From contig NC_043014.1 of the NCBI RefSeq assembly GCF_006345805.1, forward strand, positions 35,340,001 to 35,404,000: a stretch of 64,000 nt of DNA, given 5' to 3'. Made by a program: the position numbers and the translations under genes. The stretch is from Octopus sinensis. Taxonomy: Eukaryota. The first letter of the stretch is position 1; each line of letters begins with the position of its first letter. This document shows, piece after piece, positions 2,841-64,000 of this stretch. The notes under the pieces were generated by a model, which worked only from the letters and a program-made list of their open reading frames with translations, searched no databases and was not told where the DNA came from.

Positions 2841-2863
2841 CGTGATCGTCGTTTATTTTGCAG

Positions 2864-5648: not shown

Positions 5649-5742
5649 TGGTCTGTCTATCTGCCTACCTGCCTGTCTATCTGTTTGTCTGTATATCTAT
5701 ATTTTAATTTGGCCCTAAAATTGTTTTTGCTTTTGAAAACAG

Positions 5743-6298: not shown

Positions 6299-6700
6299 TT
6301 ACTCTTTACTCTTTTACTTGTTTCAGTCATTTGACTGCAGCCATGCTGGAGCACCGCCTTTAGTCGAGCAAATCGACCCCGGGACTTATTCTTTGTAAGC
6401 CCAGTACTTATTCTATCGGTCTTTTTGCCGAACCGCTAAGTGACGGGGACGTAAACACACCAGCATCGGAGTTCAAGCAATGCTAGGGGGACAAACACAT
6501 ACACACACATATATATATATATATATATACATACATACGACAGGCTTCTTTCAGTTTCCGTCTACCAAATCCACTCACAAGGCATTGGTCGGCCCGGGGC
6601 TATAGCAGAAGACACTTGGCCAAGATGCCACGCAGTGGGACTGAACCCGGAACCATGTGGCTGGTAAACAAGCTACTTACCACACAGCCACTCCTGCGCC
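6299..6700 (-). mobile_element. tRNA-derived SINE family B, full length
   Basis: A box TGGCTGTGTGG, B box GGTTCAGTCCC, internal (TA/TG)n, tail (gtaaaaga)n. Confidence 0.9.
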
Positions 6701-6926: not shown

Positions 6927-7439
6927 CAGTTGAAGATATAGTGTACTCTTTAGGGATTATAAAATCCAGATATCAACTGGAGTATTCTCTCAATATATAG
7001 GGGATAAACAGACCTCATTATATAGGGATAAGCAGATATATACATACATACATACATACATACATACATACATACATACATACATACATACGTACGTACA
7101 TGCTTACATACATATATGTGTGCGTGTGTATGTGAGTATGGTATACCTTTGTGTTTGTGTTTGTTCCCGAACATCGTTTGACAACCAGTGTTGGTATATT
7201 TACGTCTCCGTAATTTACTAGCACTTCCGTCAAAAGAGATCGATAAACTAAGTACCAGAACAAGTACTGGGGTCGATCTGTGTAATTGGATCCTTCACGA
7301 TAGTGCTCCAGTAAGGTTGCATTTCAATGACTGAAACAAGTAAAAGGTAAACGCCAAGGTTCCCGCGTAGTGTTCCTTCACCGCGTACAACAGAAACAAA
7401 CAAACAAACAAACATACAGGTAAACAAACAAAAATAAAT

Positions 7440-8200
7440 GGTTACATGAAAAGCAGTGTTGCCTGTCGAGAAGACTTCACAGATAAAAAGAGGAAGTGGA
7501 TATCGCAGAAATGAGTAAAAGTAGGCGTTTCTCAGTCAAACGAGTAAAGGCGGCGGTAGTTTTTGGTGAAGATATGAGATGCATGTTATGTATATATGTG
7601 TATGGAGGCGTGTCCATCAAGTTCTCATTCAACGACACGGCATTAGATGACGCTGGAGCAGACGCTGAAATACCAGATCTGTCCTCATCAGAGTAGATTT
7701 TTGTAATTTCAAGTGTAGCCACATGCTCTGTTCATTGACTGGCACACTTTGTATGTCTTGACTCCAAAGCAGCCACGTATGGCCCAGGTAGTATTGCTTG
7801 AATTTGAGCCTTCCCTTGAATTTCCATAAACTCTTGTCGTCCAGGGGTATACACAATTCTGAAAAATATTCAGCCACTTCGTCAACGATACCAACCTATC
7901 AGTCGACGTACGTTTAGCTTGACCGGTGCTAGCAAAGGCAACGGCGTATATTTATGTCAACTGCTGCAAAACGCAAAAGCAAATATACAAATGCGGTGGC
8001 GTAAATTAACGCCAACCGATTTAAAGTGGTTAAATTGTATAAAAAACAATTCTCTCTTTATTGTGTCTTTGGTCAGTAAATATTATTTCTTATATGCTTC
8101 TTTCTAGGAAGCAAAGGAAATGACTACTATTCCCTTCCGACTTTGCTTTTGTGACCTGGACATCAATGTTTTAAAACTGACCTATTTTCCATTAAATTCC
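7440..8200 (-). mobile_element. piggyBac transposase relic
   Basis: Frameshifted D(D)KSLWKFKGRLKFKQY, FGVKTYKVCQS...CGYT(W) and KIYSDEDR match piggyBac/PGBD DDD-domain motifs. A TTAA-CCC terminus-like motif lies on the minus strand at 9384-9378. Confidence 0.75.
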
Positions 8201-11025: not shown

Positions 11026-11162
11026 CTGTTATTGTGAATGCGGTGTGCCGGCAGAATCGTTAGCACGCCAGGGCAAAATGCTTATGAGCATTTTTTCCGT
11101 CACTACATTCTGAGTTCAAATCCCGCTAGGCTCAACTTTGTCCTTCATCCTTTCTGGGTCTC

Positions 11163-11350
11163 TCGTTTACTTGTTTCAGTCATTTGACTGCGGCCATGCT
11201 GGAGTACCGCCTTTAGTCGAGCAAATCGACCCCGGGACTTATTCTTTGTAAGCCTAGTACTTATTCTATCGGTGTCTTTTGCCGAATCGCTAAGTTACAG
11301 GGACGTAAACACACCAACATCGGTTATTAAGCGACGTTGGTGGTGGGGCA

Positions 11351-11408
<58 letters not shown>

Positions 11409-11530
11409 CATATATGCGACGAGCTTTCAGTTTCCGTCTACCAAATCCACTCACAAGGCTTTGGTCGGCCTGAGACTATGGTAGAAGACACTTGCCCAAG
11501 GTGCCGCGCAGTGGGACTGAACCCGGAAAG
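11163..11530 (-). mobile_element. SINE family B, 5' truncated
   Basis: Same body and tail as 6299-6700. Confidence 0.88.
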
Positions 11531-12119: not shown

Positions 12120-13320
12120 AGGGGAAATGGAAGAACAACAGAACAAACGAATAGAAAGAAATGGAACTGCATGTCCAATTTATGCAACACACCAAGAATG
12201 CCAGAAGCGGAGATCGCTAGCTTGGATTGACGGACAGTAAGTTGAAACGAGAAGAAACGCTAATTATAGGCGATCAGGAACAAGCCCTTCAAACAAATCT
12301 GACAAAGGTGAAGATCGACAAAACTCAGTCAGACAGCAAATACAGAATCTGCAGGAAAGGAGATGAAAGTATCAATCACTTCTTGAGTGAATGAAGTATG
12401 CTAGCGTTGAAAGAGTGTGAACGCAGACATAAGTGTGTAGCTAAAAGATCGAGTGCATTGGGATGTTTGCTAAGTGTGTGGCTTTAAAACAACGGAAAAA
12501 GCAGTATGGGCACAAACCGACCGTACTATTGAAGCAAAGAGAACAGATAGGTGCAGGAGTGGCTGTGTGGTAAGTAGCTTGCTTATGAATTACATGGTTC
12601 CGGGTTGAGCCCCACTTTGTGGCACCTTAGGCAAGTGTCTTCTACTATAGCCTCGGGCCGACCAAAGACTTGTGAGTGGATTTGGTAGACGGAAACTGAA
12701 AGAAGCTTGTCGTATATATGTATATATGTGTGTGAATGTGTTTGTGTGTCTGTGTTTGCCTTCCACCCGCCAACAATATCGCTTGACAATCGATACTGGT
12801 GTGTTTACGTCCCCGTAACTAAGCGTTTCGGCAAAAGACACCGATAGAATAAGTACTAGGCTTACAAAGAATAAGTCCTGGGGTCGATTTGCTCGACTAA
12901 AGGCGGTGCTCCAGCATGGCCGCAGTCAAGACTGAAAAAGTAAAGAGTAAAAAGATGAGAGAGAGAGGAGAGAGAGAAGAGAGAGAGAGAGAGAGGAGAG
13001 AGAGATGTAATTATAGAGGACAAAATAAATAAACAGTGTAAGGCTATATAGATTTTTAGAATTCCCTATGGAAGAAACTGAAAAAGAAAAAAAAATGGTA
13101 ATATCAGGATCTATCCAGAGGAGACTGTGAAAGACAACAATTATTCCTGTAATAATTGGTGCATTTGGAAAACATCTAACATACTGAATGAAAAGAATTG
13201 CGATTGAAACACGCATTATTGATCTCCAGGAAAGTACCATCCTATATTCTGCAAGAATTCTTAGGAAGATTAGTGTGACTTGAGGAGACATATGTTGTCA
13301 ACAAGCCTCAAGATAATAAG
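12120..13320 (+). mobile_element. Second, more decayed R4/Dong relic interrupted by a SINE
   Basis: QEQALQTN...YRICRKGDESINHFLSE at 12270-12400 and IIPVIIGAFG...LQESTIL...ARILRK at 13140-13270. Confidence 0.65.
12548..12950 (+). mobile_element. SINE family B
   Basis: gcaggagtggctgtgtggtaag...ggccgcagtcaa, full-length copy. Confidence 0.9.
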
Positions 13321-13349: not shown

Positions 13350-13631
13350 CAGTGGTTCCCAAACCGTGTGCTGCAAGATGTAATTATGTGCGCCTCGAAA
13401 AAGCAAGATTATATTTCATAATATGAAAAATACAAACCAAAGTTCACTAGGAAGTTCATGGGCGTAGGAGTAGCTGTGTGGTAAGTAGCTGGATTACGAA
13501 GCACATGGTTCTGGGTTCAGTCCCACTGCGTGGTACCTTGGACAAGTGTCTTCTACTATAGCCTCGAGCCGACCAAAAGCATTGTGAGTGGATTTGGTAG
13601 ATAGAAACTGAAAGAAGCCCGTCGTATATGC

Positions 13632-13663
<32 letters not shown>

Positions 13664-15620
13664 ATATGTTTGTGTGTCTGTGTTTGTTGCCCCAACATCG
13701 CTTGATAACCGATGCTGGTGTGTTTACGTCCCCGTATCTTAACGTTTCGGCAAAAGACACCGATAGAATAAGTACTAGACTTACAAAGAATAAGTCCTTG
13801 GGTCGATTTGCTCGACTAAAGGCGGTGCTCCAGCATGGCCGCAGTCATATGACTAAAGAGTAAAGAGTAAAGAGTATATAAATGTCTAAGTGGCAAAAAC
13901 CTAAATACTAAGTTCATTTAGGCTAATTATGGTATGACAGCGTTATTCAATTTTGAATCTGAAATTTCATAAGGATAACTGTATTAGCATCAATCGATCG
14001 ATCCTCGAAATTGACACCTTATGGACATATTCAGAGCACGACTATGTTTCATTTTATTATAGGGCGGCGATCTGGTAGAAACGTTAGCATGCCGAAATTC
14101 GTAGCAGTATTTCGTCTGTCGTTACGTTCCGAGTTCAAATTCCGCCGAGGTCGACTTTCCCTTTCATCCTTTCGGGGTCGATAAATTAAGTACCAGTTAC
14201 ACACTGGGGTCAATCTAATCGACTTAATCCGTTTGTCTGTCCTTGTTTGTCCCCTCTATGTTTAGCCCCTTGTGGGCAGTAAAGAAATATATGTTTCATT
14301 TTATTTCGGTCGTAGGCCTCAGCAGTTTTCATTTCGATTATAAATCTGAAAAATAAGCCATTGAACTAAAATATACGATGTTGAACTAAATCTTTTAGTG
14401 CGTCCTCACGTATTGCGGCTGTATTTCAATATTTTTTCGTTCATATAGTAACGAGAATTTTCATCTTTTTAACTAATTTTAAAAGACATCTCAAAAGAAT
14501 CCGATAATATGTGACACGCTGCCACTTTTCACAGCTCACTGGTCACTTGTCTCAGTCCCAATTTCATTCTGTTAGTAATCTGTGTTCTTTGTGCGAGACA
14601 ATTCATATTAATAGACTAAATTATCCATAAAATATATTTCTTTATTGCCCACAAGGGGCTAAACACAGAGGGGGACAAACAAAGACAGACAAAGGGATTA
14701 AGTCGATTACATCGACCCCAGTGCGTAACCGGTACTTTATTTATCGTCCCCGAAAGGCAAAGTTGACCTCGGCGAAATTTGAACGCAGAACGTAACAGCA
14801 GACGAAATACGGCTACGCATTTCGCCCGGCGTGCTAACGATTCTGCCAGCTCGCCGCCTTCTCTGCCAGCTCGGAAACAACCGTGACGTTTATGAACCTG
14901 AAAATGAACGCTCATCAAAAGCAATTAAGAGTGGTGATAATAATGCGAAAGCTCGACTTAGTTGTATATATTGCAATAGCTATTATAAGTTTGGGTTTCA
15001 TTGGACTGGTAACTAGTGTGTTGTTTGAGGTGAAAGGATGTCTAAGGAAGGCATGTTGCCCAGAAAGCTGAAAATACATTTTACAACTAAACACTCACAT
15101 CTTCAATATAAAGATCTGAATTATTTTCAAAGATGGCTAGAACAGCAATCTAAACAAAAAAACTATTTGGATTAAAGGATGAATGCTTCTGAAAACGCTC
15201 AAGTCACGTCTATTGAGGTAACAGAAATGGTTGCACTACAAACGAAATCGCATACTCGATTATCTTACCCGCTTGTTGGATGGTTAAAACCATATTAGGT
15301 GATGAAGCCGAGTAAGAAATAAGCAAGATTCCGCCCTCAAATAATACAATCCATAGGAGAATTATGGATTTATCTGCTGATATAGAAGAAAATGTACAGA
15401 ACACACTTTAGAACTCAGAATTTGCTGAGCTGACGAATCAACTGACATTAGCAACAAAGCAGAATTACTTAGATTTATTCGCTTTATTGATGGTAACCAA
15501 ATCATAAATCAGTTCTTTTGTTGCGAAGAAATGCCACTCACTACAAGAGGTCAAGATATTTTTGATATTTGATCAGCCTAACTCGAGAAATGGAATTTAT
15601 CTTGGAATTCATGAATTGGA
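13350..15620 (+). mobile_element. hAT (Buster/Charlie, ZBED5-like) transposon relic with nested SINEs
   Basis: TIR-like CAGTGGTTCCCAAAC at 13350. Decayed transposase at 14880-15620 with SYYKFGFHWTG, HRRIMDLSADIEENVQ, DESTDISNKAELLRFIRF and EMPLTTRGQDIFDI. Confidence 0.75.
13458..13875 (+). mobile_element. SINE family B
   Basis: Full-length copy nested in the hAT relic. Confidence 0.9.
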
Positions 15621-19913: not shown

Positions 19914-20316
19914 TAGGCGCAGGAGTGGCCGTGTGGTAAGTAGCTTGCTAACCAACCACATGGTTCTGGGTTCAGTCCCACTGCGTGGCACCTTGGGCAA
20001 GTGTCTTCTGCTATAGCTTCGGGCCGACCAATGCCTTGTGAGTGGATTTGGTAGACGGAAACTGAAAGAAGCCTGTCGTATATATGTATGTGTGTGTGTG
20101 TGTGTTTGTGTGTCTGTGTTTGTCCCCCTAGCATTGCTTGACAACCGATGCTGGTGTGTTTACGTCTCCGTCACTTAGCGGTTCGACAAAACAGACCGAT
20201 AGAATAAGTACTAAGCTTACAAAGAATAAGTCCCGGGGTCGATTTGCTCGACTAAATGCGGTGCTCCAGCATGGCCGCAGTCAAATGACTGAAACAAGTA
20301 AAGGAGTAAAAGAGTA
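19914..20316 (+). mobile_element. SINE family B
   Basis: Full-length copy. Confidence 0.9.
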
Positions 20317-21004
20317 TTAAAGAAACCATTTTGTATTAAAATATCATTTTGAATGGTTTCCAGGAAGTATTGATCTTCAAACGAGACAATATTTACAAAG
20401 CAGTGGTTCAGCACGGTCACTGCTTGCTTACTGTAAAAATTATTAATTCAACTAATTAAAAAAAAAGCTTGCAAATAAGACATACAAACACAAAACATGC
20501 CTTGAAATATATTACAAAAATTTAAAGAACTGAGATTTAATGGTGTAAAGAATTTTATTTATCTCATGAGCAACATAAAGTCTTTCTTTGAGGCAGGACA
20601 CATGTTCAGATAACATCATTTCTTTGTTATGTATTTTTTTCTTCTGTTCTATGCAGCAAGTAAAAAAAAAAAAAATTGGCCTCACTCTTACATATTAAAA
20701 AAAAAAAGGAAAAAAAGAAAATCAAAAGCTCTGTGTAAATCTGCGTAGAGAAAATGTAATAGTGTGTGTTTATGGTGTTCGCGAACCTCCTGCGAATATT
20801 AATGTTAAATATGTTTTGCCATCAGTATCATATCTATATTGTTAACAGCGAATTTCATACGTAGATCAGGTGGTAATGGGGGACAGAAACTATGGCTGAC
20901 AAAACTTATGTCGCTTGCAAGCGTTTGTTTCTTCTTGCAATTATTACCCCGCATTTGAGGTTTTAGCCGCGGATAAAACGTAAAGTCAATCGCGGTATGA
21001 TCCT

Positions 21005-27917: not shown

Positions 27918-28150
27918 TGATGATGATGATTTTGAGTATGGGGTGGAAAGCGATGCCATCGACTAGGCATTAGACAGTTACTTTTTTTTATCGACGTCGA
28001 AGGAGAAGCAGGCAAAGCTTTCTCCTATGTGATTTGGACTCAGCGTGTAAAGAGCTGAAAGAAATATCATGCGGTGTGTGTTCCAGGTATTTACATTCTG
28101 ACGCTCTGAAGTTTCCGAAGTTTCTGATGCTTCTCTCAGATCGCCACCTT

Positions 28151-28184
<34 letters not shown>

Positions 28185-28259
28185 GAAAAAAAGCAAACAA
28201 AGCAACAACAACAACAACAACAACTAACAAGAAAAATAGGAAAAAAAAATTCTTCACAA

Positions 28260-32110: not shown

Positions 32111-32816
32111 TCTTTATATATAAAATTGAAGTTGTGTGTGTGAGACTCTGTCTCCTCCGTTTTAGATTCCTAACTCTCTCTTTACTTGTTTCAGTCATTT
32201 GACTGCGGCCATGCTGGGGCACCGCCTTTAGTCGAGCAACTCGATCCCGGACTTATTCTTTTGTAAGCCCAGTACTTATTCTATCGGTCTCTTTTGCCGA
32301 ACCGCTAAGTTACAGGGACGTAAACACACCAGCATCGGTTGTCCAGCAATGCTAGGGGGACAAACACAGACACACAAACACACACACACATATAAATATA
32401 TATACATATATACGACGGGCTTCTTTCAGTTTCCGTCTACCAAATCCACTCACAAGACTTTGGTCGGCCCGAAGCTATAGAACAAGACCCTTGCCCAAGG
32501 TGCCACGCAGTGGGACTGAACCCGGAACCATGTGGCTGGTAAACAAGCTACGTACCACACAGCCACTTCTGCGCCTACTCCCACATTTTGCGGTGCAGTT
32601 TAACCAAAAGCGGGTATCTTATAGTCGTCATTCATATCGAGCCCTTCTGGGTATTAGCGCGCGTCTATGATGAGTCTACGATTTAAAAAAATTTACCATC
32701 ATTTTTTCGCATTTTTAATGACTTTTGCTCGGGTTATATAAAGGAAGTAACTCTCTAAAAATGCTTATATAGTTATTTCCCTTATAAACCCGAGCAATGC
32801 CGGGCGATACTGCTAG
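32111..32816 (+). mobile_element. Non-autonomous Helitron with a nested SINE
   Basis: 5' TC (a|TCtttatatataaaattgaagttgt), subterminal cccgagcaatgccggg hairpin, 3' CTAG|t. Inserted between A and T. Confidence 0.8.
32175..32577 (-). mobile_element. SINE family B nested in a Helitron
   Basis: Full-length copy inside 32111-32816. Confidence 0.9.
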
Positions 32817-34707: not shown

Positions 34708-35595
34708 TTATATATATATACCTACATACATACACATAGATATACGTACCTCTATATACATACATAATATATACATACACACACACATATATATATATAA
34801 TATATATATATATACATATATATATGTATATATATATATATATATATACATACATATATATACACATATATTTACATAGAGAACAAAAATACAGAGTAAT
34901 ATGCAGCGAGTACATAATTTCCTAATTCGACAACTATTTGAGGAACCTCAAACTTCAATAGTTATGATTTGCAGATGGAATATACAAAAGGTCTTAGGTA
35001 TGCAACCAGTAAATAGTCACACAGAAATATCACATTATGTGCGGCTTCTCTCTTAAAGAGAAGGTTGGCATATATATAAATATATATGTATGTATTCATA
35101 CATATACATACGTATTCATAAATACGTACATATATATATATATATATACATATATATATGTATATATATATATACACACTAATGTTTGTTATGACAAAAA
35201 CAATTTAACATAAAATCGAAGGATTACTCAAAGCACATTAAAGTACAAAATTGTATATTCGTTAAGAAAAATAATTATTAACCGTAACTTTTGCCCAGCT
35301 GAGCCATCATCGGACGGTATATGTATGTATATATATATATATATATAGGTAAAAACGGTAAGATAACAACAAAAAAAAAAGAGACCTCAATATTATGTAA
35401 ATAGAAGAATTTATCTGTTCGATGGCCGGATAACTGAAGAGATGGTGGTGTGGATTTCCACCTCGGCATCCGAAACTCCAATTCGGCCAGCCCCAAGAAA
35501 AAAAACAACAACCCAAGAGCACTAGATTCCTTGGAAGAAATCAGCGAATGTACACGAAAACAAGGACATGAATAAATCGCCATGTTTATACTTAC

Positions 35596-35733
35596 TTTCA
35601 GTTCTTTTATAAAAGATAATTGTGTAGTTATGAATCTCTGTAATTTTGCCAGTGCAGTTTAATTCCAACTCTCCTCCGACCTCAGGCTTTCCTTTGTACA
35701 TAAGTGTTACGTCTTGGGGCCTTTGGCCAGGCA
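35596..35733 (-). CDS. Gene M, N-terminal half of Ig domain 2 (VPGQRPQDVTL...ELELNCTG...FYKRTE)
   Basis: Acceptor ctctaatatAG, donor GTaagt at 35595. 138 nt, phase 1-1. Confidence 0.82.
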
Positions 35734-36704
35734 CTATATTAGAGTAAGAAACATCAGAAGAAGCGTAAAGTAATTTAAGTTTTAATAAGAGCACAATGCT
35801 GCATTATTATTATTATCATTCACAAAATTACAATAGTATCATAATAAATCCTAAGCAGTATTTCCTCACCCGCCACCCGGCTTTTGGTGTTCTATTTACA
35901 AATCCTGTCGACTTTAACTTTACCATCTCTCCTTTCTGGAAAAACGATTATCATAGCAAACAAAAGTATTAATAATTTTGCATAAAAATTGGCGGTATTT
36001 CTTCCGGCTTTAGGTTCTGAGTTCAAATCCTGCTGGCGTCTACTTTGCATTTCATCTTCCCGGGGACGATTAAATAAGTACCAGATGAGTACTGTGGTTG
36101 ATGTAATAGATCAGTCTGCTCTTACAGAATTTCAGGCCTTATGCCTTATAGCACAGAAGATCGTTATTTTATTGTCTTGGTATAAAAGACAGGCCACAGT
36201 AAATATTCTGCTCAGTACCACAAATTTGCTTGTCAGTTGTATGACCATGACGAGTTGAGCATGTCCCTTAGTTGCTGACGATATATGCATCTCTGATCAC
36301 GAGCTGTAGTGGGGGATGGGCATTATAGCCATGTGTTGTGAGGAATTCTTTGGGGTTTGAATAATTCACCTCTGGAAACATGGGTGTTTCGTTCAACATC
36401 CTTAAACAGCTCTTATTCAGGGAGCTTTTGAGAGGGATGGGCTACTCAACCTGAAGAAAATTCTAATTGTGCCTCACCTGCAAGGTCATGCGCTGTCTAT
36501 CTTGATATGAGATCGCCGTGTCGCGGACATATGGCTGCGATGTATGTGCCTAGTGTACCCTTATCGGACGGGTAGTCATGATGGGTATACTGAGCTTCGT
36601 ATATTTTATCTCAGTGTCACTTTAATGATACGCACTGCTCTTTAATTCACGCAGTAATTATAATGATGATGATGATGATGATGATGATGATATTATTATT
36701 ATTA

Positions 36705-39000: not shown

Positions 39001-39507
39001 ATCACAACACTATATATATATATGAAACCTAAAAAGCAAAACACTTCATGTCACGTTGCTCCAGTTCACTCAACCGTAAATGGCTAACCCTGAAAAGGAA
39101 TGGGCTTCCGATCAAGATGAATTCTGGCCTGCCCGCTTAGCTCGCGGAGACGCATCGTTCGAGAGCTAAAACGATGAAGAGCATATTGCACCCAGTGTTC
39201 TATAACAACACCTGATAGTCTGGTTGATCACGTGATGACGTCACTTTTCAACTTAAACTGGCGTATACAAATGTAAGCTAAAAAGTAAAGCAAATAAAAA
39301 ATGCGTTACTGCCAACCCTCGTATATATGAGGCTGCATGCTATATAACCTAGGTAGAAAACATCTAAAATTTTATTTCTCTGAATCTTTTTGCCTGAATA
39401 GATAGATACCCATCATTATAGTTAGCTGGCTATGAACTCTAAATAGTGGTATTTACGTACATACGTACATACATACATACATACACACACACGAACACAC
39501 ACACATA

Positions 39508-40660
39508 CAGGGTGCGATGGGTAAATTGTCGCCATTTTATATTTTTAATTTCGCGCATGCACATTGTTTGTTTTTGATTTTGTCAACTACACAGTATAGT
39601 AGGGTCAGTTGGGCACGGTTTGTGAGAAAAACAGCACCATGATGCAATTCACTCTGCCAGAAAGTTGGAAATGACATGCTGTACTGCTTGGCATTCGCGT
39701 CGGAAGCTCCAATACGAACATTTCAGAGTGTTTGGGTGTCAATCTGAGGAGAGTGCAGAGGATTCCGAAAGAGTTGGATAAGTCTAATGGTGATTACGAA
39801 GGTATGGCAGCTCGGAAAACTCACTCTGATCGTTCTGATAAGAAAAGAACTCCTAAATTTGTTGGTGCGATTCAGGCTATGATTGACAACGATCCCTCCA
39901 AGTCAATCAGGTCCATCACTAGGGATATGGGAATGTCTGAGTTTCTTATCAGGCAGGTAGTGCATGAAAACACTCGTTATTCCTCATACAAGATGAGAAA
40001 GGGCCAATTTTTATCCCAAGAAAAAAAACCAAGCTACGAAGCTTTCGAACAAACCCAAGCATCCATTCCAACCGAACATGCTTTGGTTTTCCTCAGACAA
40101 GAAAAATTTCTCCTAGGATCAGATGATGAGCCCACAGAACAACCGTTGGCTTGCCGTGTCCCCAAAACATGTAACGAGAGTGATAAAAATCAAACATCCA
40201 GTCAACATCACGGTGTTTGGAGTGATCATTAGTGATGGCGACGATATGCTTCCATTCAACAGGACTCTACACCATGCCACACAAGCAGGAGAACCTAGTC
40301 ATGGCTGTCAAACAATTTCTGTGACCATATCACCCCTAACATCTGGCCACCTAACTCCCCAGACTACAAACCCCTTGATTATTATGTATGGGTGCAGTAG
40401 AGCAAGAGACCAACAAAACTCCTTATAACACCAAAGAAGAACTGAAGGCAAGGATTAAGACCATCCAGAAGAGTTGCAGGAGATTCCGAAGTTGTCAGGA
40501 GGCCGTGGTTAAAGTCAATGGCGATTTTATTGAATAAATTTACTCGTTAATATTTCAAAATATTTTAATGTAATTTTGGTAAATATATCTGTTAAAATGA
40601 GATGTCAGTGTTGTTTTCATTTTTGCGAAATTTAGACGACAATTTATTCACCGTACCCTG
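39508..40660 (+). mobile_element. Tc1/mariner element of maT (DD37D)-like type, both ends present, internally deleted and frameshifted
   Basis: TA-CAGGGTGCGATGGGTAAATTGTCG ... CGACAATTTATTCACCGTACCCTG-TA. Translation includes IDNDPSKSIRSI.RDM, KHPVNITVFGVI.SDG and WPPNSPDYKPLDYYVW. Confidence 0.85.
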
Positions 40661-49315: not shown

Positions 49316-50253
49316 CACGCCTAATCTCGCTCATCGCCAATCTTTCTTTCTTTCTTTATTCTTTTCTTTCTTCTCTTTCTCTCTCTCCCTCTCTCCTCTT
49401 CTCTTCATCTATTCTCCCTCTATCTATCTATCATCTATCTATCTACCTATCTATCTATCTAGCTAACTGTCCGTCCGTCCGTCCGTCTATCTGTCACATA
49501 CATACACATACACAAATATATAACTACACATACACACATATAAATACGTATTTATATTCAAATATAAACACAGATAACAACATAAGTGTATTATTTCTAT
49601 AAATGTGTGTGTATGTAGCCATTCTATGATGCATCTACACATGAATTCATCCGTATCATTAAAAGAAGCCATTTATCCCACCCATCCCATCCTATCCACA
49701 TGATATTTCCTCATTCTGTTCCTCTCCATTCATACGTTTCCTTATGCCCCCTCCTCCGTTCACATTACGCAAATAAAGCAATGCTAATAAAAGAAGGTGT
49801 CTGTTTGTATCTATGCGTGCGTCACAGTGCACACGTGTGACTGCACTCATGTGTCAATGTGCCTTCCTATGTACGTCTGTGTCTGTGTGAATGCATATAT
49901 ATGAGTGCATGTGTGTGTGAGTGTGCGCCTGTATATATGTGTGAGCATGTGTGAGCGTGTGTGTGTGTGTGTGATTTTTGTGGGTTTTTGTTCGTTGTGT
50001 GCGTGTGTGCTACTCACTCAGTAGAGAAATCCATGTTAGCTGTGATATAAGAGGCATCTATACTCGCGAACTCATTGTGATCTGGAGTTTTCTTAAACCA
50101 TCCCATAGTCTCAGGGGGGTTGCCAGCATGTCCAATACACGTGATGTCTACATTGAAACAATTTGTCGCCTTGTTTTGTGTCAATTCTACACCGTTTTTC
50201 GGGACTGAAGAAAACAAATTTCCGTTTAGAAAACTTATATATATATATATGTA

Positions 50254-55455: not shown

Positions 55456-56434
55456 AACGTTCAAGCAAAATATTGGAGAATAATACAAAGTTTCCTATTT
55501 CTGTCTCTTTGTTTGTCAGATAGAGGCATTTATTATTCTATAGAAAAATCCACTACGGTAAATGTTTCGTTATAGAATTCTGATGCTTTTGAAAAAACAG
55601 CTACAGCCGAAGAAAAAGATGTTATACGTTTCCTGGCTTTGGAAACTAAATCGCAGAGAATACTAGGCGAATGATTAAAACTATCATTTATATAAAATAA
55701 CCTTTCAGTACGTTTATAGCGAAGACAATATTTTCATACAATATTTTCTTTGTATATTTGATTTTATCTTTACACATACATCCAATGAAGTTCTTTTGTT
55801 TACAATATCTGAACATGCTTATAAATAGTTTCCTGTTTCATTTTCAAATTTCTTTCGAAGATCGGAGACGTGAAACCTAGAATCAGAGAGTGTGAAGTTT
55901 AGGCGTTGTAAAATATATTTTGACACTCTACTTTCAGTATAGAGCTCTTTGTTTTGATCTTGTTTACACTGAAGACTTTTATTAACATGTTTACATATGT
56001 ATATACGTATATCCGCGTGTTTCTTTATATGTATGTGTATGGATGTGAGTGTATGGAGGGTAAGGCAGAGGAAGAGAGAGAAAGTGAAAGGAAAAGGATA
56101 CTCCAACATACAGGAAGAAAAGGTTTTTAAAATTTTAATAAAAGAAAGAAGTAGAATGTATGCTAAAACACGATAAACTTAGATAACTCGAAGATTAAAT
56201 ATGTTAAAACAAAATTAAAAAAAATACAAACCACAAAGCACTAATTTGAGAAGACAGAAATGATGGAAGCCTTTCTGTCTTTTCGGTCTCCAATTAGTGG
56301 TTTTGATATCTAATCATTTGCATAAACATCCTAGCAGTTAATTCAAATAAAATGAAAATAAAGAAAAAAGAAACGCAGAAAAATATTAAACAAAACCGCA
56401 AAAATAAGGAAGAACCCAAATAAGACAGACAAAC

Positions 56435-56767
56435 CGTAAAAGTCGACTCTCTCTTGAGCTTCTTTGGGGTCTTTGTTTTTCGCAGAAAGTAGGCATTTGT
56501 AAATGTTTCCGTCTGTGCATACTGGGTTCTTCACTTGCAAACTGAGAGTTGTCTGCTTTTTTAGATCTTTGAAGAATGTAAAGTGATCTTTCAAGGATTC
56601 ATCTGACCATTGGACTCGGGGTCTGCTTGTAGGGTCGAAAGTCAATATTTCCTCTTTGCCGCGATATATGGAGAAACTCTGTATTTTCTTAGACATGACA
56701 TCGGTCGTGCAGTTGATAAAGATTGATTGCGACAATGAAGGTTTGGGTGGGTCCACGACTATAGACA
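56435..56767 (-). CDS. Gene M, V-like Ig domain exon (SIVVDPPKP...INCTT...W...LSLQVKNPVCTDGNIYKC...VDFY)
   Basis: Acceptor tcttgcAG, donor GTttgt. 333 nt, phase 1-1, open frame. D-x-x-x-Y-x-C F-strand motif (DGNIYKC). Confidence 0.88.
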
Positions 56768-57492
56768 CTGCAAGATTAATAAATTATTCAATCAATTAAA
56801 TGTCTAATCAATATATAAATAATTTTAAAAAGGGTTTGGCTACGTTTGATGTAGAAACCAGTAACTGCCAACCATTTATAGTATTCACATGAATATTTCA
56901 CATAATATATCTTTGACTAAATTAGAAAATATAGCCATAGATCTGAATAACAGTCAGGATACTCAAGGATAGAACACTATTGGTCAGAAAAATGTTCAAT
57001 GAGTGTCGACCTGGAGTCAAACAATTACAGCATCATAAGCCAGACATTACATGTCCCCCAAAAGGCATAAACATATCATGTGGAAAATTTGGCTGCCATT
57101 TTAAAGTTGACATCTTCAGTGACAGGATAGTAGAAATTTTAGGTGAAGTAGCCCACAATGGAATTGACTTAAAGTCCATGATGTGCTATCGAGTGCTATC
57201 AAAAGTAAGGGCACAATTGATTTCTTATTAGACTATCATTTTGAAACTGAAAGGAAATGTCCCACTCACTTCAACAATTTTCCACTATTGATAGTAAAAG
57301 CAAAATGAGTGAAATACGTTTATTTTCGATTCATAACCCTTGTTCAACCAAGCTTCATATTTGCAGCTTCCATTATAACAAATACTCCCTGCTATAGTTC
57401 AACCTAGTTCATGGAACTCTCTAATCTATATCTCGATAAAATGAACCTGAAACAACAAATAATTTCTTTTACTTGCGGTAACTACATTTCTT

Positions 57493-57800
57493 TTGTGGAG
57501 GCACATGGCCTTGTGGTTAGAGCGGTGAACTCGCGGTCGAGGGATCGCGGGTTCGAATCTCAGACCGGACGATGTGTGTGTTTATGACCGAAACACCTGA
57601 GCTCCACGCGGCTCCGACAGAAGGTAATGGCGAAACTTCTGCTGACTCTTTCGCCACAACTTTCTCTCACTCTTTCCGCCTGCATCTTGCAGCTCACCTG
57701 CGATGGACCGGCGTCCCGTCCAGGTGAGGAACCTATACGCCAAGAAACCAGGAAACCGGCCCTCATGAGCCAGGCATAGCTCGAGAAGGAACAAACAACA
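57493..57800 (+). mobile_element. SINE with family C head and a third tail type
   Basis: Colinear with 26107-26390. Confidence 0.82.
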
Positions 57801-58553
57801 AACATCATTTCTTTTAACTACTGCACTACTTTTTATATAAGATATAAAATTACAAGTTTACTAGTCACTCGTTATATATCATTTTCTCTTGTCTTAGTAG
57901 TTATCCCTTATCCCGCTTTGGATTAGATCTGCTCTCCTATTAGTCCATAAGAACACAAACAATCGGAACAAGTAGCTCAAATCCATTGCTCTGCCATTTC
58001 AATCTTTTTCAAACATAATAGATTTATGATTATATGATGTTTTTCTTAAGAGATGTTAGGTTGTTATTTCTTAATACTTTTCTTAGGTATTACTACTTTT
58101 GATTGATCTACAATGTTAATGCTATTCTTGTTTTTCCCGGGTTAGCTCTACGGAACCAGCCCCGGGATGATATTTGGTATATCGTGATATACATTATCAA
58201 ATGTTTTACTTTCATAAAGAGGACAGGGTGTTATATGTAACAGGTCAAGCGATCCTGCAAACGTTCCACTAGCGCTCGCTGTGGTGCATATACATACATA
58301 TATGTATATATAATGTATATGCACACACATACACACATAAACACACATACACGCACATACACATTTCTTGGGGTAAAAGCAGAACAACGAGAATCTGTTT
58401 AGATTCTCGGTCAGGTATTCACATTCGAATGAACCAGAACATATGAAAATGAATAAATCAAGGATTCAATCTTCCCCAACATTCTTTCTCTAATATTAAC
58501 GACCTACTTATAGTCAACCCCAGCAAAACTAATTTCAATGTTGAGGACACTAT

Positions 58554-59443
58554 TTCCTATTTCTCCTTAAGCTTCAGCACCTAGAATCATCCATATGAAC
58601 TACTGACTCCAGCGCCAAGAACATAGATCTCTTAAGGCGGCGAACTGGCAGAAACGTTAGCACGCCGGGCGAAAACTCCAAATTATGCTACCGAACTCTG
58701 AAGGATGAAAAGCAGATCTGACCGTCACGGAAACTGGAATCTAAATGTAAGAGGATGCAACTAAATACTGCAAAGCATTTAGTCAGTGATTTACAGCAGC
58801 GCCTTTCAATCTTTATCGAGAGGTACCATAAGTGATATAGTATACCACAAGCTTTCTTTGTCTGCCTTTCTCACTCGCTCTTTCCATAGGAAAAGTTATA
58901 GGAGGGTTCTCCTGTTAGCCTACAGAAGTTTAATGATAATTTACTCTTCAACTCTCACGCCCTTCTGTGCTAAATTTTGCGTCATATGGAAACTTTTTTT
59001 CCTATTTCTCCTTAAGCTTCAGCACCTAGAATCATCCATATGAACTACTGACTCCAGCGCCAAGAACATAGATCTCTTAAGGCGGCGAACTGGCAGAAAC
59101 GTTAGCACGCCGGGCGAAAACTCCAAATTATGCTACCGAACTCTGAAGGATGAAAAGCAGATCTGACCGTCACGGAAACTGGAATCTAAATGTAAGAGGA
59201 TGCAACTAAATACTGCAAAGCATTTAGTCAGTGATTTACAGCAGCGCCTTTCAATCTTTATCGAGAGGTACCATAAGTGATATAGTATACCACAAGCTTT
59301 CTTTGTCTGCCTTTCTCACTCGCTCTTTCCATAGGAAAAGTTATAGGAGGGTTCTCCTGTTAGCCTACAGAAGTTTAATGATAATTTACTCTTCAACTCT
59401 CACGCCCTTCTGTGCTAAATTTTGCGTCATATGGAAACTTTTT
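58554..59443. repeat. Apparently identical tandem duplication of a 445-bp unit
   Basis: The same ORF text starts at 58786 and 59231 (offset 445). No differences seen by eye. Confidence 0.93.
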
Positions 59444-60250: not shown

Positions 60251-60274
60251 GGTCTTGACTGGATACTCCAGAAA
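60251..60274 (-). CDS. Gene M, 24-nt microexon (xSGVSSQD), probably the end of the signal peptide
   Basis: Minus strand reads tttttctttactacAG|TTTCTGGAGTATCCAGTCAAGACC|GTaagt. Phase 1-1, splices in frame to the 56767 exon giving SGVSSQDLSIVVDP. Confidence 0.7.
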
Positions 60275-60369
60275 CTGTAGTAAAGAAAAATAGGAGTAAT
60301 TTAATAGTCAATAGCGGTGATAACAGTTCATACACACGAACGCACACACACTACCCAAACACACACAAA

Positions 60370-60419
<50 letters not shown>

Positions 60420-60420
<1 letters not shown>

Positions 60421-60651
60421 GCGAGAAAGAAGCAACAAGAATGGATAGGTTTTTAGTACGATCGTTTCATACAAGGACAGGTTTTATTAAAAGTTGCAAA
60501 GATTACAGCATATAAACGAGTCCCGTACTCATCAGCTAAAATACATGTAAGTTCTCTAGACATCCTAGTGTTTGAGGCTATACTCATGAAGTAATGTAGA
60601 TAATTAAACAGATTTCTAAAGTTCATTAAAGTTCTTTAAAGATGATGTACA

Positions 60652-60655
<4 letters not shown>
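60420..60655 (-). mobile_element. Penelope-like terminal-repeat fragment carrying the hammerhead, embedded in (TA)n
   Basis: Unique ~235-bp block between two TA microsatellites. It contains a type I hammerhead with palindromic stem III, which is known for Penelope-like elements. Confidence 0.5.
60451..60541 (-). ncRNA. Type I hammerhead ribozyme motif (Penelope-type, palindromic stem III)
   Basis: TTTTAG-CTGATGA-GTAC/GGGAC...GTCCT/GTAT-GAAA-C GATC G-TA-CTAAAA. Intact core, 6-bp stem I, GUA cleavage triplet, G.U at the base of stem II. Confidence 0.7.
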
Positions 60656-60690
<35 letters not shown>

Positions 60691-60721
60691 CGTGTGTGTG
60701 TGTGTATGTATATATATATAT

Positions 60722-60946
60722 AAAATTAGAAAGAACCTCCTTTTATCAATTCAAAATGAACGATTAAATTACACCATCTAGAAAATTACATATGATATTC
60801 GTTTTTATTATTTTTTTGCAATTTAATTAATCATTGCTATTTTATTGTTATTTAAATTTTAATATTTCTATTATATGTAATTTTCTAGATGGTGTAATTT
60901 AATTGTTCCTTTTGAATTGATAAAAGGTGGTTCTTTCTAATTTTTT
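60722..60946. mobile_element. AT-rich MITE with ~72-bp TIRs inserted in (TA)n
   Basis: aaaattagaaagaacc...tctagaaaattacatat (60722-60793) is inverted at 60873-60944 with ~3 mismatches. Confidence 0.8.
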
Positions 60947-62312
60947 ATATATATATATTATATTGTGTGAAATTTGATTTAGTATTTCTAAAGTGAATTT
61001 TTTTCCCTGTAAGTTAGGATTAATATTCCCTCAAATAATTATATATATATATATGTTGTACTCTGTGTGTCTGTGTGTGTCTGTACGTATGTATATGTAC
61101 ACGCACATACACAGATGCAGACACACACACACACACACACATATCAACTCATACACACCCATAAATACAACTGTATTTCTAGAGATTTATCTCTAAATGT
61201 AACTATTAAAAAGTTTCTCGTGTTTTCGATCGATGTCATATTGAACAAAAAAAAAATTAAATGATGGAATAAATTAAGTAATTAGAAGTTAAAAATAAAT
61301 ATGTATACAGAAAAAATAAAGTAGTTCACAACTCTTAAAGTTTCACACACATACACGCGCATACACCCATTTACGAAAATACACACACGTACATTAATAT
61401 GTACACACGAAAGAAAATAGCACTCAACATCCTGCTGCGATATTTAAATATTTGTATGAAAAGCTTGATTTTCAAACGCATAGATTCAAATGTAGATTCA
61501 AAAAAATTAAAGGAAAAAATATCTTAGCATGGGATGCTTATTTCTTAATGATGAGCTAGGCACAGTTTCTAAAGGAGGTTGATTATCATCTGGTGGGTGA
61601 ATAAGATTTGTTTTCATTGGTCAGTTTGGATCACGTGATGGCATCGGTATCTTGATAATTGCTAACTAATGCTAAAAGAAGGCAACACTACAAATTCATA
61701 AACTGCATCTTTGTTGAAAAGATAAAGAAAAAAAACTAACTAAACTGACGCTTTACTGCCTCCAGGGAACCCTCTGTTGGTAACATTCAGCCATTAACTG
61801 TTGATACTACTTCATAAACTTTAGTGAAATTTTAAATTTCACTCAGATTGCCAACTAAAGCGAGGTAAACTAATCTACTGTATTGCTGTTGCCCTTCTTA
61901 TTCAGTAGCAGTTGCCAACCGCTGAGACATTCATTTCAACAACATTACCTATTTACAATGAACTTTATCCACCATTCAATGAAAATTTTATTCGAAAGCG
62001 GTAAATGCCCAATCACTTAAAATTAAGGGTTCAGACAATCACTTATACCTTTCCACGTGCGTGTAACCTCAAGATTTTCATTTTTTTATTGGTATATTCA
62101 CGCACGCGCGCGTACACAGAGCACTGCACGTGTTCGCGCGCATACACACACACTTACCTCGCTTATCTATACATGTATATTTGCAGAATGTGTGTATATA
62201 TGTCTAAATATATATACATACATACACACACGCACATACACACATGTATAAATATATATATATATATATATACACATATATATATATGTATGTATGTATG
62301 TACATATATATA

Positions 62313-62766: not shown

Positions 62767-62877
62767 TAGAGATAATTGTTAAAGAACACACAAACACACC
62801 CATATATATATATATATACATATATGTATGTGTGTGGACGTGTATGTATATTTTACATATTTAAATATATACTCTTT

Positions 62878-63095
62878 TATCTCTTTTACTCTTTTATTTG
62901 TTTCAGTCATTTGACTGCGGCCATGCTGAAGCACCGTCTTTATTCAAACAAATCAAACCCAGGGCTCATTATTTCTAAGCCTAGTACTTATTTTTTGGGG
63001 GACTCTTTTGCCGAACTGCTAAGTTACGGGGAAGTAAACACAGGAGATTTTGGCGGGGTGGGAAACACAGACACACCAGTGCGCACGCACGCACA

Positions 63096-63150
<55 letters not shown>

Positions 63151-63298
63151 GGCAAGCTTTCCGTCTACCAAATCCACTCAAAAGGCTTTGGACGGCCCGA
63201 GGCTATAGTAGAAGACACTCGCCCAATGTGCCACGCAGTGAGACTGAACCCGGAACCATTTAGTTGGTGAGCAAGCTACTTACCACACAGCCACTCCC
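62878..63298 (-). mobile_element. SINE family B, diverged
   Basis: Same head, body and tail. Confidence 0.85.
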
Positions 63299-64000
63299 AT
63301 ATAATATATGTGTGTATCAATGGATCTAACTATTATCATGTGAAGCGAATTAGTAGCTTAGCTGTATAGGCTGTAGAGGCGACTCATCAGACTCAACTAG
63401 TGGGAGGAAAACGTCATGGTCAGCAAACAAAAAATACCAGAGCAAAACTCGTATGGTAAAGTCTTTGGTGAGACGGAGTTGTTCCCCCTTACCTCACTTC
63501 CGGCCTAGTCCACAACGACTTCGGAAGTTTGTAGCGCTACCCTAGTCGGTAATATTAATTGATGCCATTCATAATCAGGTTAATGTATTCGCGCTAATTC
63601 AATATACACTATATGGGCCGAATAATTGTCGTTGAAGTGTTCTAATACGATCGAAACGTTTCCATTGCCTTCACTGGTCGGTTCTAAAGTCAAGATCCAC
63701 TCTATTGGAATTATATCATTTGTTGGTGTTCTTAGATTTTTAAGCGGATCTCGGACTAGGTTTTGTCTCCTAATTGCAAAGATGGGTCGTGGTTTAATCT
63801 ACATTACTCCGTAAGGAGCGTACGGTGATTTTCTTGCTTTATCTGATGTATATATATTTCTTCCTGGACGGGAAGCCGGTCCGTCGCAGGATTACTCATT
63901 TTTATCTGCTGTGTGGACTGGAGCAACTTGAAATAAAGTGTCTTGCTCAAGAACTCAATGTGTCACCTGGTCCCGGAATCGAAACTGCAATCCTACAGTC

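What the first reader, a model, noticed from the sequence alone, without database searches (positions are those of the whole stretch)
60451..60541. Sense-strand hammerhead ribozyme ~180 nt upstream of gene M's microexon
Seen: a complete type I core (CUGAUGA/GAAA/GUA), 6-bp stem I, extended stem II and an 8-nt palindrome ACGATCGT as stem III, on the strand of the pre-mRNA and 177 nt from the 24-nt exon. Established: Penelope-type hammerheads with palindromic stem III cleave mainly as dimers. Inference: cleavage between 60457 and 60456 could cut this intron and affect microexon inclusion or transcript output.
Basis: partly seen in the sequence, partly recalled or inferred. Interest (0 to 1): 0.72.

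Follow-up and report, generated by a model that had tools for sequence, protein, structure and literature searches.

The report
Lone hammerhead ribozyme motif, octopus
The sequence does contain a complete hammerhead self-cleaving RNA motif of the kind carried by Penelope-like jumping genes. It is a single, atypical copy sitting in a TA microsatellite of an octopus genome, most likely a transposon relic, and nothing shows that it regulates a gene.

Summary
On the minus strand, 60541..60451 carries every invariant hammerhead nucleotide: CUGAUGA, GAAA and U16.1-A17. It also has a 6-bp helix I and a helix III of 2 bp plus a palindromic GAUC loop (ACGAUCGU). Cleavage is predicted between 60457 and 60456.

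A motif this good is expected about 0.0006 times per 64-kb window in a 200-Mb Markov null, and no null hit with comparable helices I and II had a palindromic helix III.

The window is octopod DNA, and octopus genomes hold many Penelope-like elements (PLEs). The motif lies in a 235-bp unique segment (60420-60654) bounded on both sides by (TA)n. A bona fide PLE 3' end in a comparison locus has a hammerhead followed by (TA)n on its 3' side.

The motif is atypical:
- Helix II spans 60 nt.
- The 10.1-11.1 pair is G·U, not G-C.
- The predicted lowest-energy fold is not a hammerhead.
- No second copy, PLE reading frame or relative was found.
- Rfam does not score it, but it also misses my two control hammerheads.

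"Gene M", its microexon and transcription through the motif cannot be verified.

Best reading: a solitary PLE- or retrozyme-derived hammerhead relic. A regulatory role is unsupported.

The parts
60451..60541 (-). Complete type I hammerhead motif: helix I, core, helix II, GAAA, helix III, A17, helix I
   Evidence: Sequence; descriptor scan; null model
60536..60541 (-). Helix I 5' strand UUUUAG. It pairs with CUAAAA at 60456-60451. The helix is 6 bp and a seventh position would be A/A.
60529..60535 (-). Core C3 U4 G5 A6 U7 G8 A9 (CUGAUGA)
60469..60528 (-). Helix II segment of 60 nt: GUAC/GUAU (G10.1.U11.1 wobble at the base), 1-nt bulge, GGGAC/GUCCU, then a loop of about 41 nt
60458..60468 (-). 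G12 A13 A14 followed by ACGAUCGU. In a monomer helix III is 2 bp plus a GAUC loop; two copies could form an 8-bp intermolecular helix III.
60451..60457 (-). A17 (60457), predicted scissile bond 60457|60456, and helix I 3' strand CUAAAA
60420..60654 (-). 235-bp unique segment carrying the motif: 113-nt leader, 91-nt motif, 31-nt tail. Candidate solo transposon fragment.
   Evidence: No other copy in the window; bounded by microsatellites
60373..60419 (.). (AT)23.5 microsatellite, immediately 3' of the segment on the minus strand
   Evidence: (TA)n is a preferred PLE target (PMC8557442); control loci L007 and L004 have (TA)n 3' of their hammerheads
60655..60687 (.). (TA)16.5 microsatellite, immediately 5' of the segment on the minus strand
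60251..60274 (-). Unverified.
56435..56767 (-). Nearest credible minus-strand exon. Ig V-set-like, phase 1-1, reading frame kept open in a related species.
   Evidence: Pfam V-set E=0.0019; P0001 75% identical; orthologous contig L001 81% (MAFFT) to 83.5% (blastn) nt identity through exon and intron

Best explanation
The motif is a solitary genomic copy of a transposon-borne type I hammerhead ribozyme from the Penelope-like element (PLE) / non-LTR retrozyme lineage.

It sits in a 235-bp fragment (60420-60654, minus-strand orientation) that landed in, or is embedded in, a (TA)n microsatellite of an octopod genome. In such elements the ribozyme serves the element's own RNA: it self-cleaves after H17 by in-line attack of the 2'-OH. 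This processes multimeric or read-through transcripts, often through a two-copy 'double hammerhead' in which the palindromic helix III strands of two motifs pair.

This copy has no partner. Its helix II is abnormally long, its 10.1-11.1 pair is a wobble, and it has competing alternative pairings. I therefore infer that it is a weak or inactive relic with no host function.

Shown: the motif, its improbability by chance in this window, the microsatellite context, the octopod origin, and PLE hammerheads with (TA)n on their 3' side in a comparison assembly.

Inferred: the transposon origin of this particular copy, and its low activity.
For: - All invariant core positions and the 6 bp / 4 bp-proximal / 2 bp + 4-nt palindromic loop pattern are present. 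This pattern matches the canonical metazoan type I description in PMC4209133.
- Chance expectation is about 0.0006 per window, and no null hit with helix I >=5 bp and helix II >=4 bp had a palindromic helix III.
- The window is octopod. The transposon ORF at 39732-40232 hits an Octopus vulgaris protein, and 89 repeat matches of 80-91% identity link the window to an O. vulgaris chromosome locus. PLEs are an abundant and partly active order in O. vulgaris (PMC13282606).
- The segment is bounded by (TA)n on both sides, and (TA)n is a preferred PLE target (PMC8557442).
- Control locus L007 has a GIY-YIG PLE ORF (Pfam E=2e-6), a hammerhead about 300 nt downstream, then (TA)n about 80 nt further. 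L004 has a minimal hammerhead followed by (TA)n.
- A mismatch at the base of helix II occurs in a natural active family (axolotl HHR_Amex2, PMC7229834).
- No partner copy was found.
- The hammerhead fold scores -9.8 against an MFE of -16.1 kcal/mol, and helix III has zero ensemble probability. The control hammerheads do fold into hammerhead shape as their MFE.
Against: - No relative of the 235-bp segment was found anywhere I could search: the window, 95 kb of cephalopod loci, two metagenome pattern scans, and protein-space searches with the 57-aa ORF that spans the motif. Family membership is therefore not demonstrated.
- There is no PLE RT or GIY-YIG remnant in the window (ORF lists).
- The motif lacks the unpaired nucleotide after A9 and the G10.1-C11.1 pair. 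PMC4209133 lists both among the recurring marks of genuine PLE hammerheads.
- A 60-nt helix II is unusual.
- No Rfam hammerhead model scores it even at E<=10 on 401 nt. The same search also misses both control hammerheads, so this is weak evidence.
- (TA)n is very common in this genome, so the flanks may be coincidence.
Confidence: 0.55

Rival explanations
1. Chance look-alike. AT-rich sequence happens to satisfy the hammerhead descriptor. The motif was never part of a ribozyme-bearing element and does not cleave.
For: - The null gives about 27 comparable motifs (helix I >=6 bp, helix II >=4 bp, helix III segment 10 nt or less) per 2.7-Gb genome. Such look-alikes exist somewhere, and a scan of many windows will meet them.
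- Helix I is 5 A-U pairs plus 1 G-C, and helix II includes three G.U pairs or a bulge.
- The fold z-score is -0.87, and the MFE is not a hammerhead.
- No relatives were found.
- No Rfam hit.
- The marks of real PLE hammerheads are missing: an unpaired nucleotide after A9 and G10.1-C11.1 (PMC4209133).
Against: - The per-window expectation is only 0.0006-0.01.
- In the null the palindromic helix III appeared once, and only at the loosest helix thresholds (helix I >=4 bp, helix II >=3 bp).
- Genuine PLE hammerheads occurred about twice in 74 kb of the ERZ21867824 cephalopod loci L004-L007, orders of magnitude above the chance rate.
- The (TA)n context resembles that of real PLE 3' ends.
Confidence: 0.27
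2. One reading: a co-opted intronic ribozyme. The motif is transcribed within an intron of a minus-strand gene. It self-cleaves co-transcriptionally, as a monomer or through intermolecular dimers, and so severs the pre-mRNA upstream of a 24-nt microexon and tunes exon inclusion or transcript output.
For: - A credible minus-strand Ig V-set exon lies 3.7 kb downstream (56435-56767).
- The 24-nt candidate has a good acceptor and a perfect GTAAGT donor, and only 3 such candidates exist in the window.
- Precedents exist: conserved intronic type I hammerheads in amniote genes such as RECK, CTCL and DTNB (PMC6155905), and the intronic CPEB3 ribozyme, whose cleavage rate competes with splicing (PMC10919898).
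- Helix III of 2 bp plus a tetraloop can support monomeric cleavage in invertebrate motifs (PMC7229834).
Against: - There is no evidence of transcription, of a first exon upstream of 60541, or of microexon use.
- Conservation could not be tested.
- No partner copy exists for dimer formation.
- The double-hammerhead dimer scores -34.4 against a dimer MFE of -39.3 kcal/mol.
- Helix II is far longer than the 4 bp that allows loop 1 / loop 2 docking (PMC4209133), so fast cleavage at cellular Mg2+ is unlikely.
- In vertebrates, retrozyme hammerheads are depleted from introns, which suggests selection against active genic copies (bioRxiv 10.64898/2026.07.22.740005).
Confidence: 0.05
3. An active solo retrozyme or PLE 3' fragment. 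The copy is transposon-derived and still cleaves itself when read through, but only as a property of the element, with no role for the host gene.
For: - The core is intact.
- Monomer genomic copies of retrozymes exist, and unit sizes of 220-240 bp are known (PMC7229834; bioRxiv 10.64898/2026.07.22.740005).
- The segment is 235 bp and 34% G+C.
- A natural family with a mismatch at the base of helix II still cleaves (PMC7229834).
Against: The structural objections are the same as for the best explanation: long helix II, competing folds, and no family members found.
Confidence: 0.13

Closest known systems
Canonical metazoan type I hammerheads of non-LTR retrozymes and satellite-like repeats (Schistosoma Sm-alpha, newt/axolotl satellite 2, coral and mussel retrozymes; Rfam Hammerhead_1 RF00163)
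   Same: Open helix I of 6 bp, an identical invariant core, a helix III of 2 bp capped by a palindromic tetraloop, an AT-rich carrier of about 230 bp, and the first 4 bp of helix II.
   Different: - Those occur as tandem repeats in hundreds to more than 100,000 copies; here there is one copy and no tandem partner.
- Their helix II is 4 bp with a small loop that docks on loop 1; here 60 nt separate A9 and G12.
- The 10.1-11.1 pair is G.U here.
- This motif does not reach any Rfam score.
Minimal hammerheads in the pseudo-LTRs / 3' ends of Penelope-like elements (Cervera & de la Pena 2014; Lunse et al. 2017)
   Same: A palindromic helix III that allows a double-hammerhead dimer, a longer than usual helix II, a position close to a 3' end that abuts (TA)n, and a host genome rich in PLEs.
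   Different: - The unpaired nucleotide between A9 and 10.1 is missing, as is G10.1-C11.1.
- Helix I is 6 bp rather than 4-5 bp.
- No RT or GIY-YIG ORF and no second pseudo-LTR copy lie nearby.
- The control PLE hammerheads (L007, L004) have a compact helix II of 14-21 nt.
Conserved intronic hammerheads of amniotes (RECK, CTCL, DTNB; Rfam HH9/HH10) and the intronic CPEB3 HDV-like ribozyme
   Same: A transposon-like type I hammerhead, possibly on the sense strand of an intron. The proposed mechanism is the same: co-transcriptional cleavage competing with splicing.
   Different: Those are defined by deep orthologous conservation and demonstrated cleavage. Here neither conservation, nor transcription, nor cleavage is known, and the intron itself is unverified.

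Membership tests
Hammerhead ribozyme (type I) | Invariant core: C3 U4 G5 A6 N7 G8 A9, G12 A13 A14, A15.1-U16.1, H17 (not G) | tested here: met
   CUGAUGA 60535-60529; GAA 60468-60466; A15.1 60465 pairs with U16.1 60458; A17 60457
Hammerhead ribozyme (type I) | Three helices around the core, with helix I open (5' and 3' ends in helix I) | tested here: met
   Helix I 6 bp. Helix II 7 contiguous pairs, or 4 bp + 5 bp with a bulge. Helix III 2 bp plus a GAUC loop.
Hammerhead ribozyme (type I) | Highly conserved G10.1-C11.1 pair at the base of helix II | tested here: not met
   G10.1 (60528) faces U11.1 (60469), a wobble pair. A natural axolotl family with a U.U mismatch there still cleaves (PMC7229834).
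Hammerhead ribozyme (type I) | Score at or above the gathering threshold of an Rfam hammerhead model | tested here: not met
   No hammerhead family at gathering or at E<=10 on 401 nt. The same search misses the genuine PLE hammerhead of L007 and the minimal one of L004, so the test has low power for this class.
Hammerhead ribozyme (type I) | Loop 1 / loop 2 tertiary contacts that give fast cleavage at low Mg2+ | tested here: inconclusive
   Helix II continues well beyond 4 bp and carries a loop of about 41 nt, so the canonical docking geometry is unlikely.
Hammerhead ribozyme (type I) | The hammerhead secondary structure is thermodynamically accessible | tested here: inconclusive
   Constrained hammerhead fold -9.8 against MFE -16.1 kcal/mol. 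Helix I and proximal helix II have about 0.26 ensemble probability, helix III 0. Double-hammerhead dimer -34.4, two monomers -32.2, dimer MFE -39.3. Controls L007 and L004 fold into hammerhead shape as their MFE.
Hammerhead ribozyme (type I) | Site-specific self-cleavage after H17 | not testable with these tools
   Needs in vitro transcription or RNA-end mapping.
PLE-associated hammerhead | Lies in the pseudo-LTR / 3' region of an element encoding RT and GIY-YIG endonuclease | tested here: not met
   tblastn of the L007 GIY-YIG ORF against the window gave nothing better than E=2.3. No RT-like ORF appears in the ORF lists. A 5'-truncated fragment would lack the ORF, so this does not exclude PLE origin.
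PLE-associated hammerhead | Unpaired nucleotide between A9 and 10.1 | tested here: not met
   A9 is followed directly by the paired G10.1. Both control motifs have the extra nucleotide.
PLE-associated hammerhead | Palindromic positions 15.2-16.2 / loop 3 that allow a dimeric active form | tested here: met
   ACGAUCGU is a perfect 8-nt palindrome. The double-hammerhead pairing is nested and evaluates to -34.4 kcal/mol.
PLE-associated hammerhead | Insertion in or next to (TA)n microsatellite | tested here: met
   (AT)23.5 at 60373-60419 and (TA)16.5 at 60655-60687 flank the segment. Target bias is described in PMC8557442, and controls L007 and L004 have (TA)n 3' of their hammerheads. (TA)n is common in this genome, so the weight is modest.
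PLE-associated hammerhead / retrozyme | Member of a multi-copy family showing covariation; second copy in tandem or within about 3 kb | tested here: not met
   No second copy in the window. CTGATGA 2.85 kb upstream is not a hammerhead. No relatives in the loci, metagenomes or protein space searched. Whole octopus genomes could not be searched.
Domesticated intronic hammerhead (HH9/HH10-like) | Lies on the sense strand of a verified intron | not testable with these tools
   There are no transcript data. No first exon was found upstream, and the locus has no annotated protein.
Domesticated intronic hammerhead (HH9/HH10-like) | Orthologous conservation above the neutral level | not testable with these tools
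   Only a 1.1-kb orthologous contig around the V-set exon could be retrieved (L001, 81-83.5% identity). The orthologous site of the motif could not be fetched.

The most novel reading that the evidence does not exclude
The motif is a host-co-opted intronic hammerhead in a cephalopod Ig-domain gene. Its co-transcriptional cleavage, possibly concentration-dependent through intermolecular dimers at the ACGAUCGU palindrome, would gate inclusion of a 24-nt microexon. This would be the first invertebrate counterpart of the amniote intronic hammerheads.
Probability: 0.04. Interest if true: 0.75.

Novelty: new member of a known kind. Interest (0 to 1): 0.25.

Why it matters
If this is only a relic, it is one more of the very many transposon-borne hammerhead copies in animal genomes. 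Its value is then mostly annotation: no paper in the searched library describes a hammerhead in an octopus genome, although PLEs are abundant there.

It would matter if the motif proved conserved and active in a real intron. That would extend ribozyme control of pre-mRNA processing, so far argued for a few amniote genes, to cephalopods.

Tried and rejected
- **Rfam.** No hammerhead at gathering on the whole window, or at E<=10 on 401 nt. I first read this as evidence against. Then I found that the same search misses a genuine PLE hammerhead (L007) and a minimal one (L004), so I down-weighted it.
- **Second copy in the window.** blastn of the 235-bp segment, both motif halves with up to 3 mismatches and the GAAACGATCGTH pattern found none. 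CTGATGA at 63384-63390, 2.85 kb upstream on the same strand, was checked as a possible second pseudo-LTR hammerhead and rejected.
- **Relatives elsewhere.** Two metagenome pattern scans returned zero.
- **Protein-space proxy.** The 57-aa ORF spanning the motif is not on record and has no word-sharing homologue. The exhaustive phmmer search gave only multi-stretch, 25-44% identity matches to repeat proteins, for example P0048, which I judged to be noise.
- **Comparison loci.** blastn against 95 kb of cephalopod loci found nothing.
- **PLE coding remnants in the window.** None.
- **CpG decay as the cause of U11.1, or as an age marker.** CpG observed/expected is 0.92 in the segment and 0.83 in the window, which is uninformative.
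- **Gene M.** A naive search for a signal-peptide first exon upstream gave one microsatellite-encoded artefact. The V-set exon search found only one Logan ORF.
- **SRA accession.** A literature search for SRR11869390 found nothing.

Full report
**1. What is in the sequence**

Reading the minus strand from 60541 to 60451 gives:

5'-UUUUAG CUGAUGA [60 nt] GAA ACGAUCGU A CUAAAA-3'

Every invariant hammerhead position is present:
- C3-A9 is CUGAUGA (60535-60529).
- G12 A13 A14 is at 60468-60466.
- A15.1 (60465) pairs with U16.1 (60458).
- H17 is A (60457).

The helices are as follows:
- Helix I is exactly 6 bp (UUUUAG/CUAAAA). A seventh pair would be A/A.
- Helix III is A-U and C-G closing a GAUC loop. 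Equivalently it is the 8-nt palindrome ACGAUCGU, which two copies could pair into an 8-bp helix.
- Helix II is GUAC/GUAU, then a bulged U, then GGGAC/GUCCU, capped by about 41 nt. Read contiguously it is 7 pairs with three G.U.

My descriptor scan finds this as the only good hammerhead candidate in the 64 kb. The other hit is a GAT-repeat artefact at 28100-28185.

**2. Is it more than chance?**

I simulated 200 Mb (both strands) with a third-order Markov model of the window and applied the same descriptor, allowing helix II segments up to 90 nt.

| Requirement | Hits in 200 Mb | Per window | Per 2.7-Gb genome |
|---|---|---|---|
| Helix I >=6 bp and helix II >=4 bp | 31 | 0.01 | about 418 |
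| Also helix III segment 10 nt or less | 2 | 0.0006 | about 27 |
| Palindromic helix III, with helix I >=5 bp and helix II >=4 bp | 0 | <0.0003 | – |

The motif is thus unlikely to be chance in this one window. A genome of this size should still hold a few to a few dozen look-alikes.

**3. Where the window comes from**

- A transposon ORF at 39732-40232 has 46 relatives, one of them named as an Octopus vulgaris protein.
- The 20-kb O. vulgaris chromosome locus L003 shares 89 repeat matches of 80-91% identity with the window.
- A Logan contig (L001) is orthologous to 56281-57075, at 83.5% identity by blastn and 81% by MAFFT, through both exon and intron.

The window is octopod DNA. PLEs are one of the main transposon orders in O. 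vulgaris, with 31 recently active families (PMC13282606). No paper in the searched library describes hammerheads in octopus.

**4. Context of the motif**

The motif lies in a 235-bp segment (60420-60654) that is unique within the window. The segment is bounded by (AT)23.5 at 60373-60419 and (TA)16.5 at 60655-60687. On the minus strand this gives a 113-nt leader, the 91-nt motif and a 31-nt tail running into (TA)n.

PLEs show an insertion bias for microsatellites, (TA)n in particular, and carry their hammerheads near the 3' end (PMC8557442).

I obtained positive controls from loci fetched for other reasons:
- **L007.** A GIY-YIG endonuclease ORF (7373-7840, minus strand; Pfam PF01541, E=2e-6) is followed about 300 nt downstream by a hammerhead: GGUC CUGAUGA U GGUUC..GAACC GAA ACGCUAUAGUGU U GACC. 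A (TA)n tract follows about 80 nt later.
- **L004.** A textbook minimal hammerhead is followed by (TA)n about 110 nt further: UCAC CUGAAGA A GGCCAGA..UUUGGCC GAA ACGU A GUGA.

Genuine PLE hammerheads in cephalopod-type DNA therefore sit just upstream of (TA)n, as the window's motif does.

**5. What does not fit**

- Both controls have the unpaired nucleotide after A9, a G10.1-C11.1 pair and a compact helix II. PMC4209133 lists the first two among the recurring marks that argue against a random origin. The window's motif has neither. Its 10.1-11.1 pair is G.U, and 60 nt separate A9 from G12.
- Both controls fold into hammerhead shape as their minimum-energy structure. The window's motif does not.
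  - Its MFE is -16.1 kcal/mol with z = -0.87, and it uses competing GUAUUU/GAGUAC and GUAUGA/UCGUAC pairings.
  - The hammerhead-constrained fold is -9.8 kcal/mol.
  - Helix III has zero ensemble probability.
- A two-molecule double hammerhead scores -34.4 kcal/mol. That is slightly better than two separate monomers (-32.2) but worse than the unconstrained dimer (-39.3).
- There is no second copy in the window to supply a tandem partner. A CTGATGA 2.85 kb upstream is not a hammerhead.
- No PLE coding remnant is present.
- No Rfam hammerhead model scores the motif. Rfam also misses both controls, so this carries little weight.

**6. Search for relatives**

- Two exact-pattern scans of the metagenome collection returned nothing.
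- A 57-aa ORF (60453-60626, minus strand) happens to span the whole motif, so I used it as a protein-space proxy.
  - It is not on record.
  - It shares no words with any of 5.8 billion proteins.
  - An exhaustive phmmer search returned only low-identity, multi-stretch matches to repeat proteins.
- The tools cannot search whole octopus genomes with DNA. Copy number and orthologous conservation, which are the decisive data, remain unknown.

**7. The gene context**

- The nearest credible minus-strand exon is an Ig V-set-like exon at 56435-56767. It is in phase 1-1, with Pfam E=0.0019. Its reading frame is kept open at 75% amino-acid identity in a species that is about 81-84% identical at neutral sites.
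Only 3 such candidates occur in the window. It is open in all frames and nothing else supports it.
- I found no first exon upstream of the motif.
- No annotated protein covers the locus.

Whether the motif is transcribed at all, and in which orientation, is not known.

**8. Mechanism and verdict**

I judge the motif a solitary transposon-derived hammerhead (PLE or non-LTR retrozyme lineage), most likely weak or inactive, at confidence 0.55.

In its parent element the motif would cleave the element's own multimeric or read-through RNA after H17. This often happens through a double hammerhead built on the palindromic helix III (PMC4209133, PMC7229834).

Invertebrate motifs with a 2-bp helix III plus tetraloop can cleave well as monomers (PMC7229834), so dimer dependence is not certain here. 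The obstacle here is instead the aberrant helix II and the competing folds.

Alternatives:
- A chance look-alike remains a serious alternative (0.27).
- A still-active but functionless solo copy is possible (0.13).
- A co-opted intronic ribozyme that regulates the microexon is mechanistically conceivable. Precedents are the amniote intronic hammerheads (PMC6155905) and CPEB3 (PMC10919898). Nothing I could compute supports it (0.05). The reported depletion of retrozyme hammerheads from vertebrate introns argues that active genic copies are selected against (bioRxiv 10.64898/2026.07.22.740005).

**9. Novelty**

At most this is a new member of a known kind: one more transposon-type hammerhead copy, in a lineage where such motifs are not yet described in the papers I could search.

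Noticed in passing
window 58553-58998 and 58998-59443: Exact (100%) 446-bp head-to-tail duplication. Either a very recent tandem duplication or an assembly artefact.
   Followed up: no
window 60705-61054: Repeat of about 350 bp directly upstream (minus strand) of the hammerhead segment. It is partly self-inverted (60709-60957, 81%) and has two copies at about 90% identity in O. vulgaris locus L003 (1170-1439, 11526-11786). MITE- or foldback-like.
   Followed up: partly
window 62873-63297, 19922-20323, 12556-12963, 11162-11528, 32176-32567, 13467-13882, 6555-6694: SINE-like repeat family of about 430 bp with at least 7 copies in the window (76-89% identity). It is also present several times in O. 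vulgaris L003 and is often joined to CA/TA microsatellites.
   Followed up: partly
window 57540-57800 (-): tRNA-like sequence embedded in a repeat, probably a tRNA-derived SINE. ARAGORN calls no intact tRNA in the window.
   Followed up: no
window 39503-40652 (+): DNA-transposon-like ORFs (39732-40232, 40123-40428). They are 86% identical in nucleotides to O. vulgaris L003 9624-10395 and have 46 protein relatives. This match identified the window as octopod.
   Followed up: partly
window 56435-56767(-), 50014-50250(-), 35522-35794(-), 2842-3213(+), 5700-6023(+): Several Ig-like exon-sized ORFs on both strands, suggesting a cluster of fast-evolving Ig-domain genes. Only the first was checked (V-set, E=0.0019; 75% amino-acid identity to a related species).
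   Followed up: partly
L007 7032-7840 (-) and L004 6208-6252 (-): Genuine PLE 3' end in ENA assembly ERZ21867824: GIY-YIG ORF, about 300 nt, hammerhead, about 80 nt, (TA)n. A separate minimal hammerhead in L004 is followed by an A-rich tail and (TA)n. Rfam detects neither at E<=10.
   Followed up: yes
window 60453-60626 (-): A 57-aa ATG-to-stop ORF spans the whole hammerhead motif (ILADEYG = UUUUAGCUGAUGAGUACGG). It has no homologues and is taken as spurious. P0048, a protein of tandem units of about 52 aa, shows 12/30 ungapped identities per repeat, judged to be noise.
   Followed up: yes
window 60320-60372 and 60687-60709: The (TA)n tracts flanking the segment are themselves flanked by a CA-rich tract on the left and a TG-rich tract on the right. 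The whole is a compound, self-complementary (CA)n(TA)n...(TA)n(TG)n microsatellite split by the 235-bp segment.
   Followed up: no
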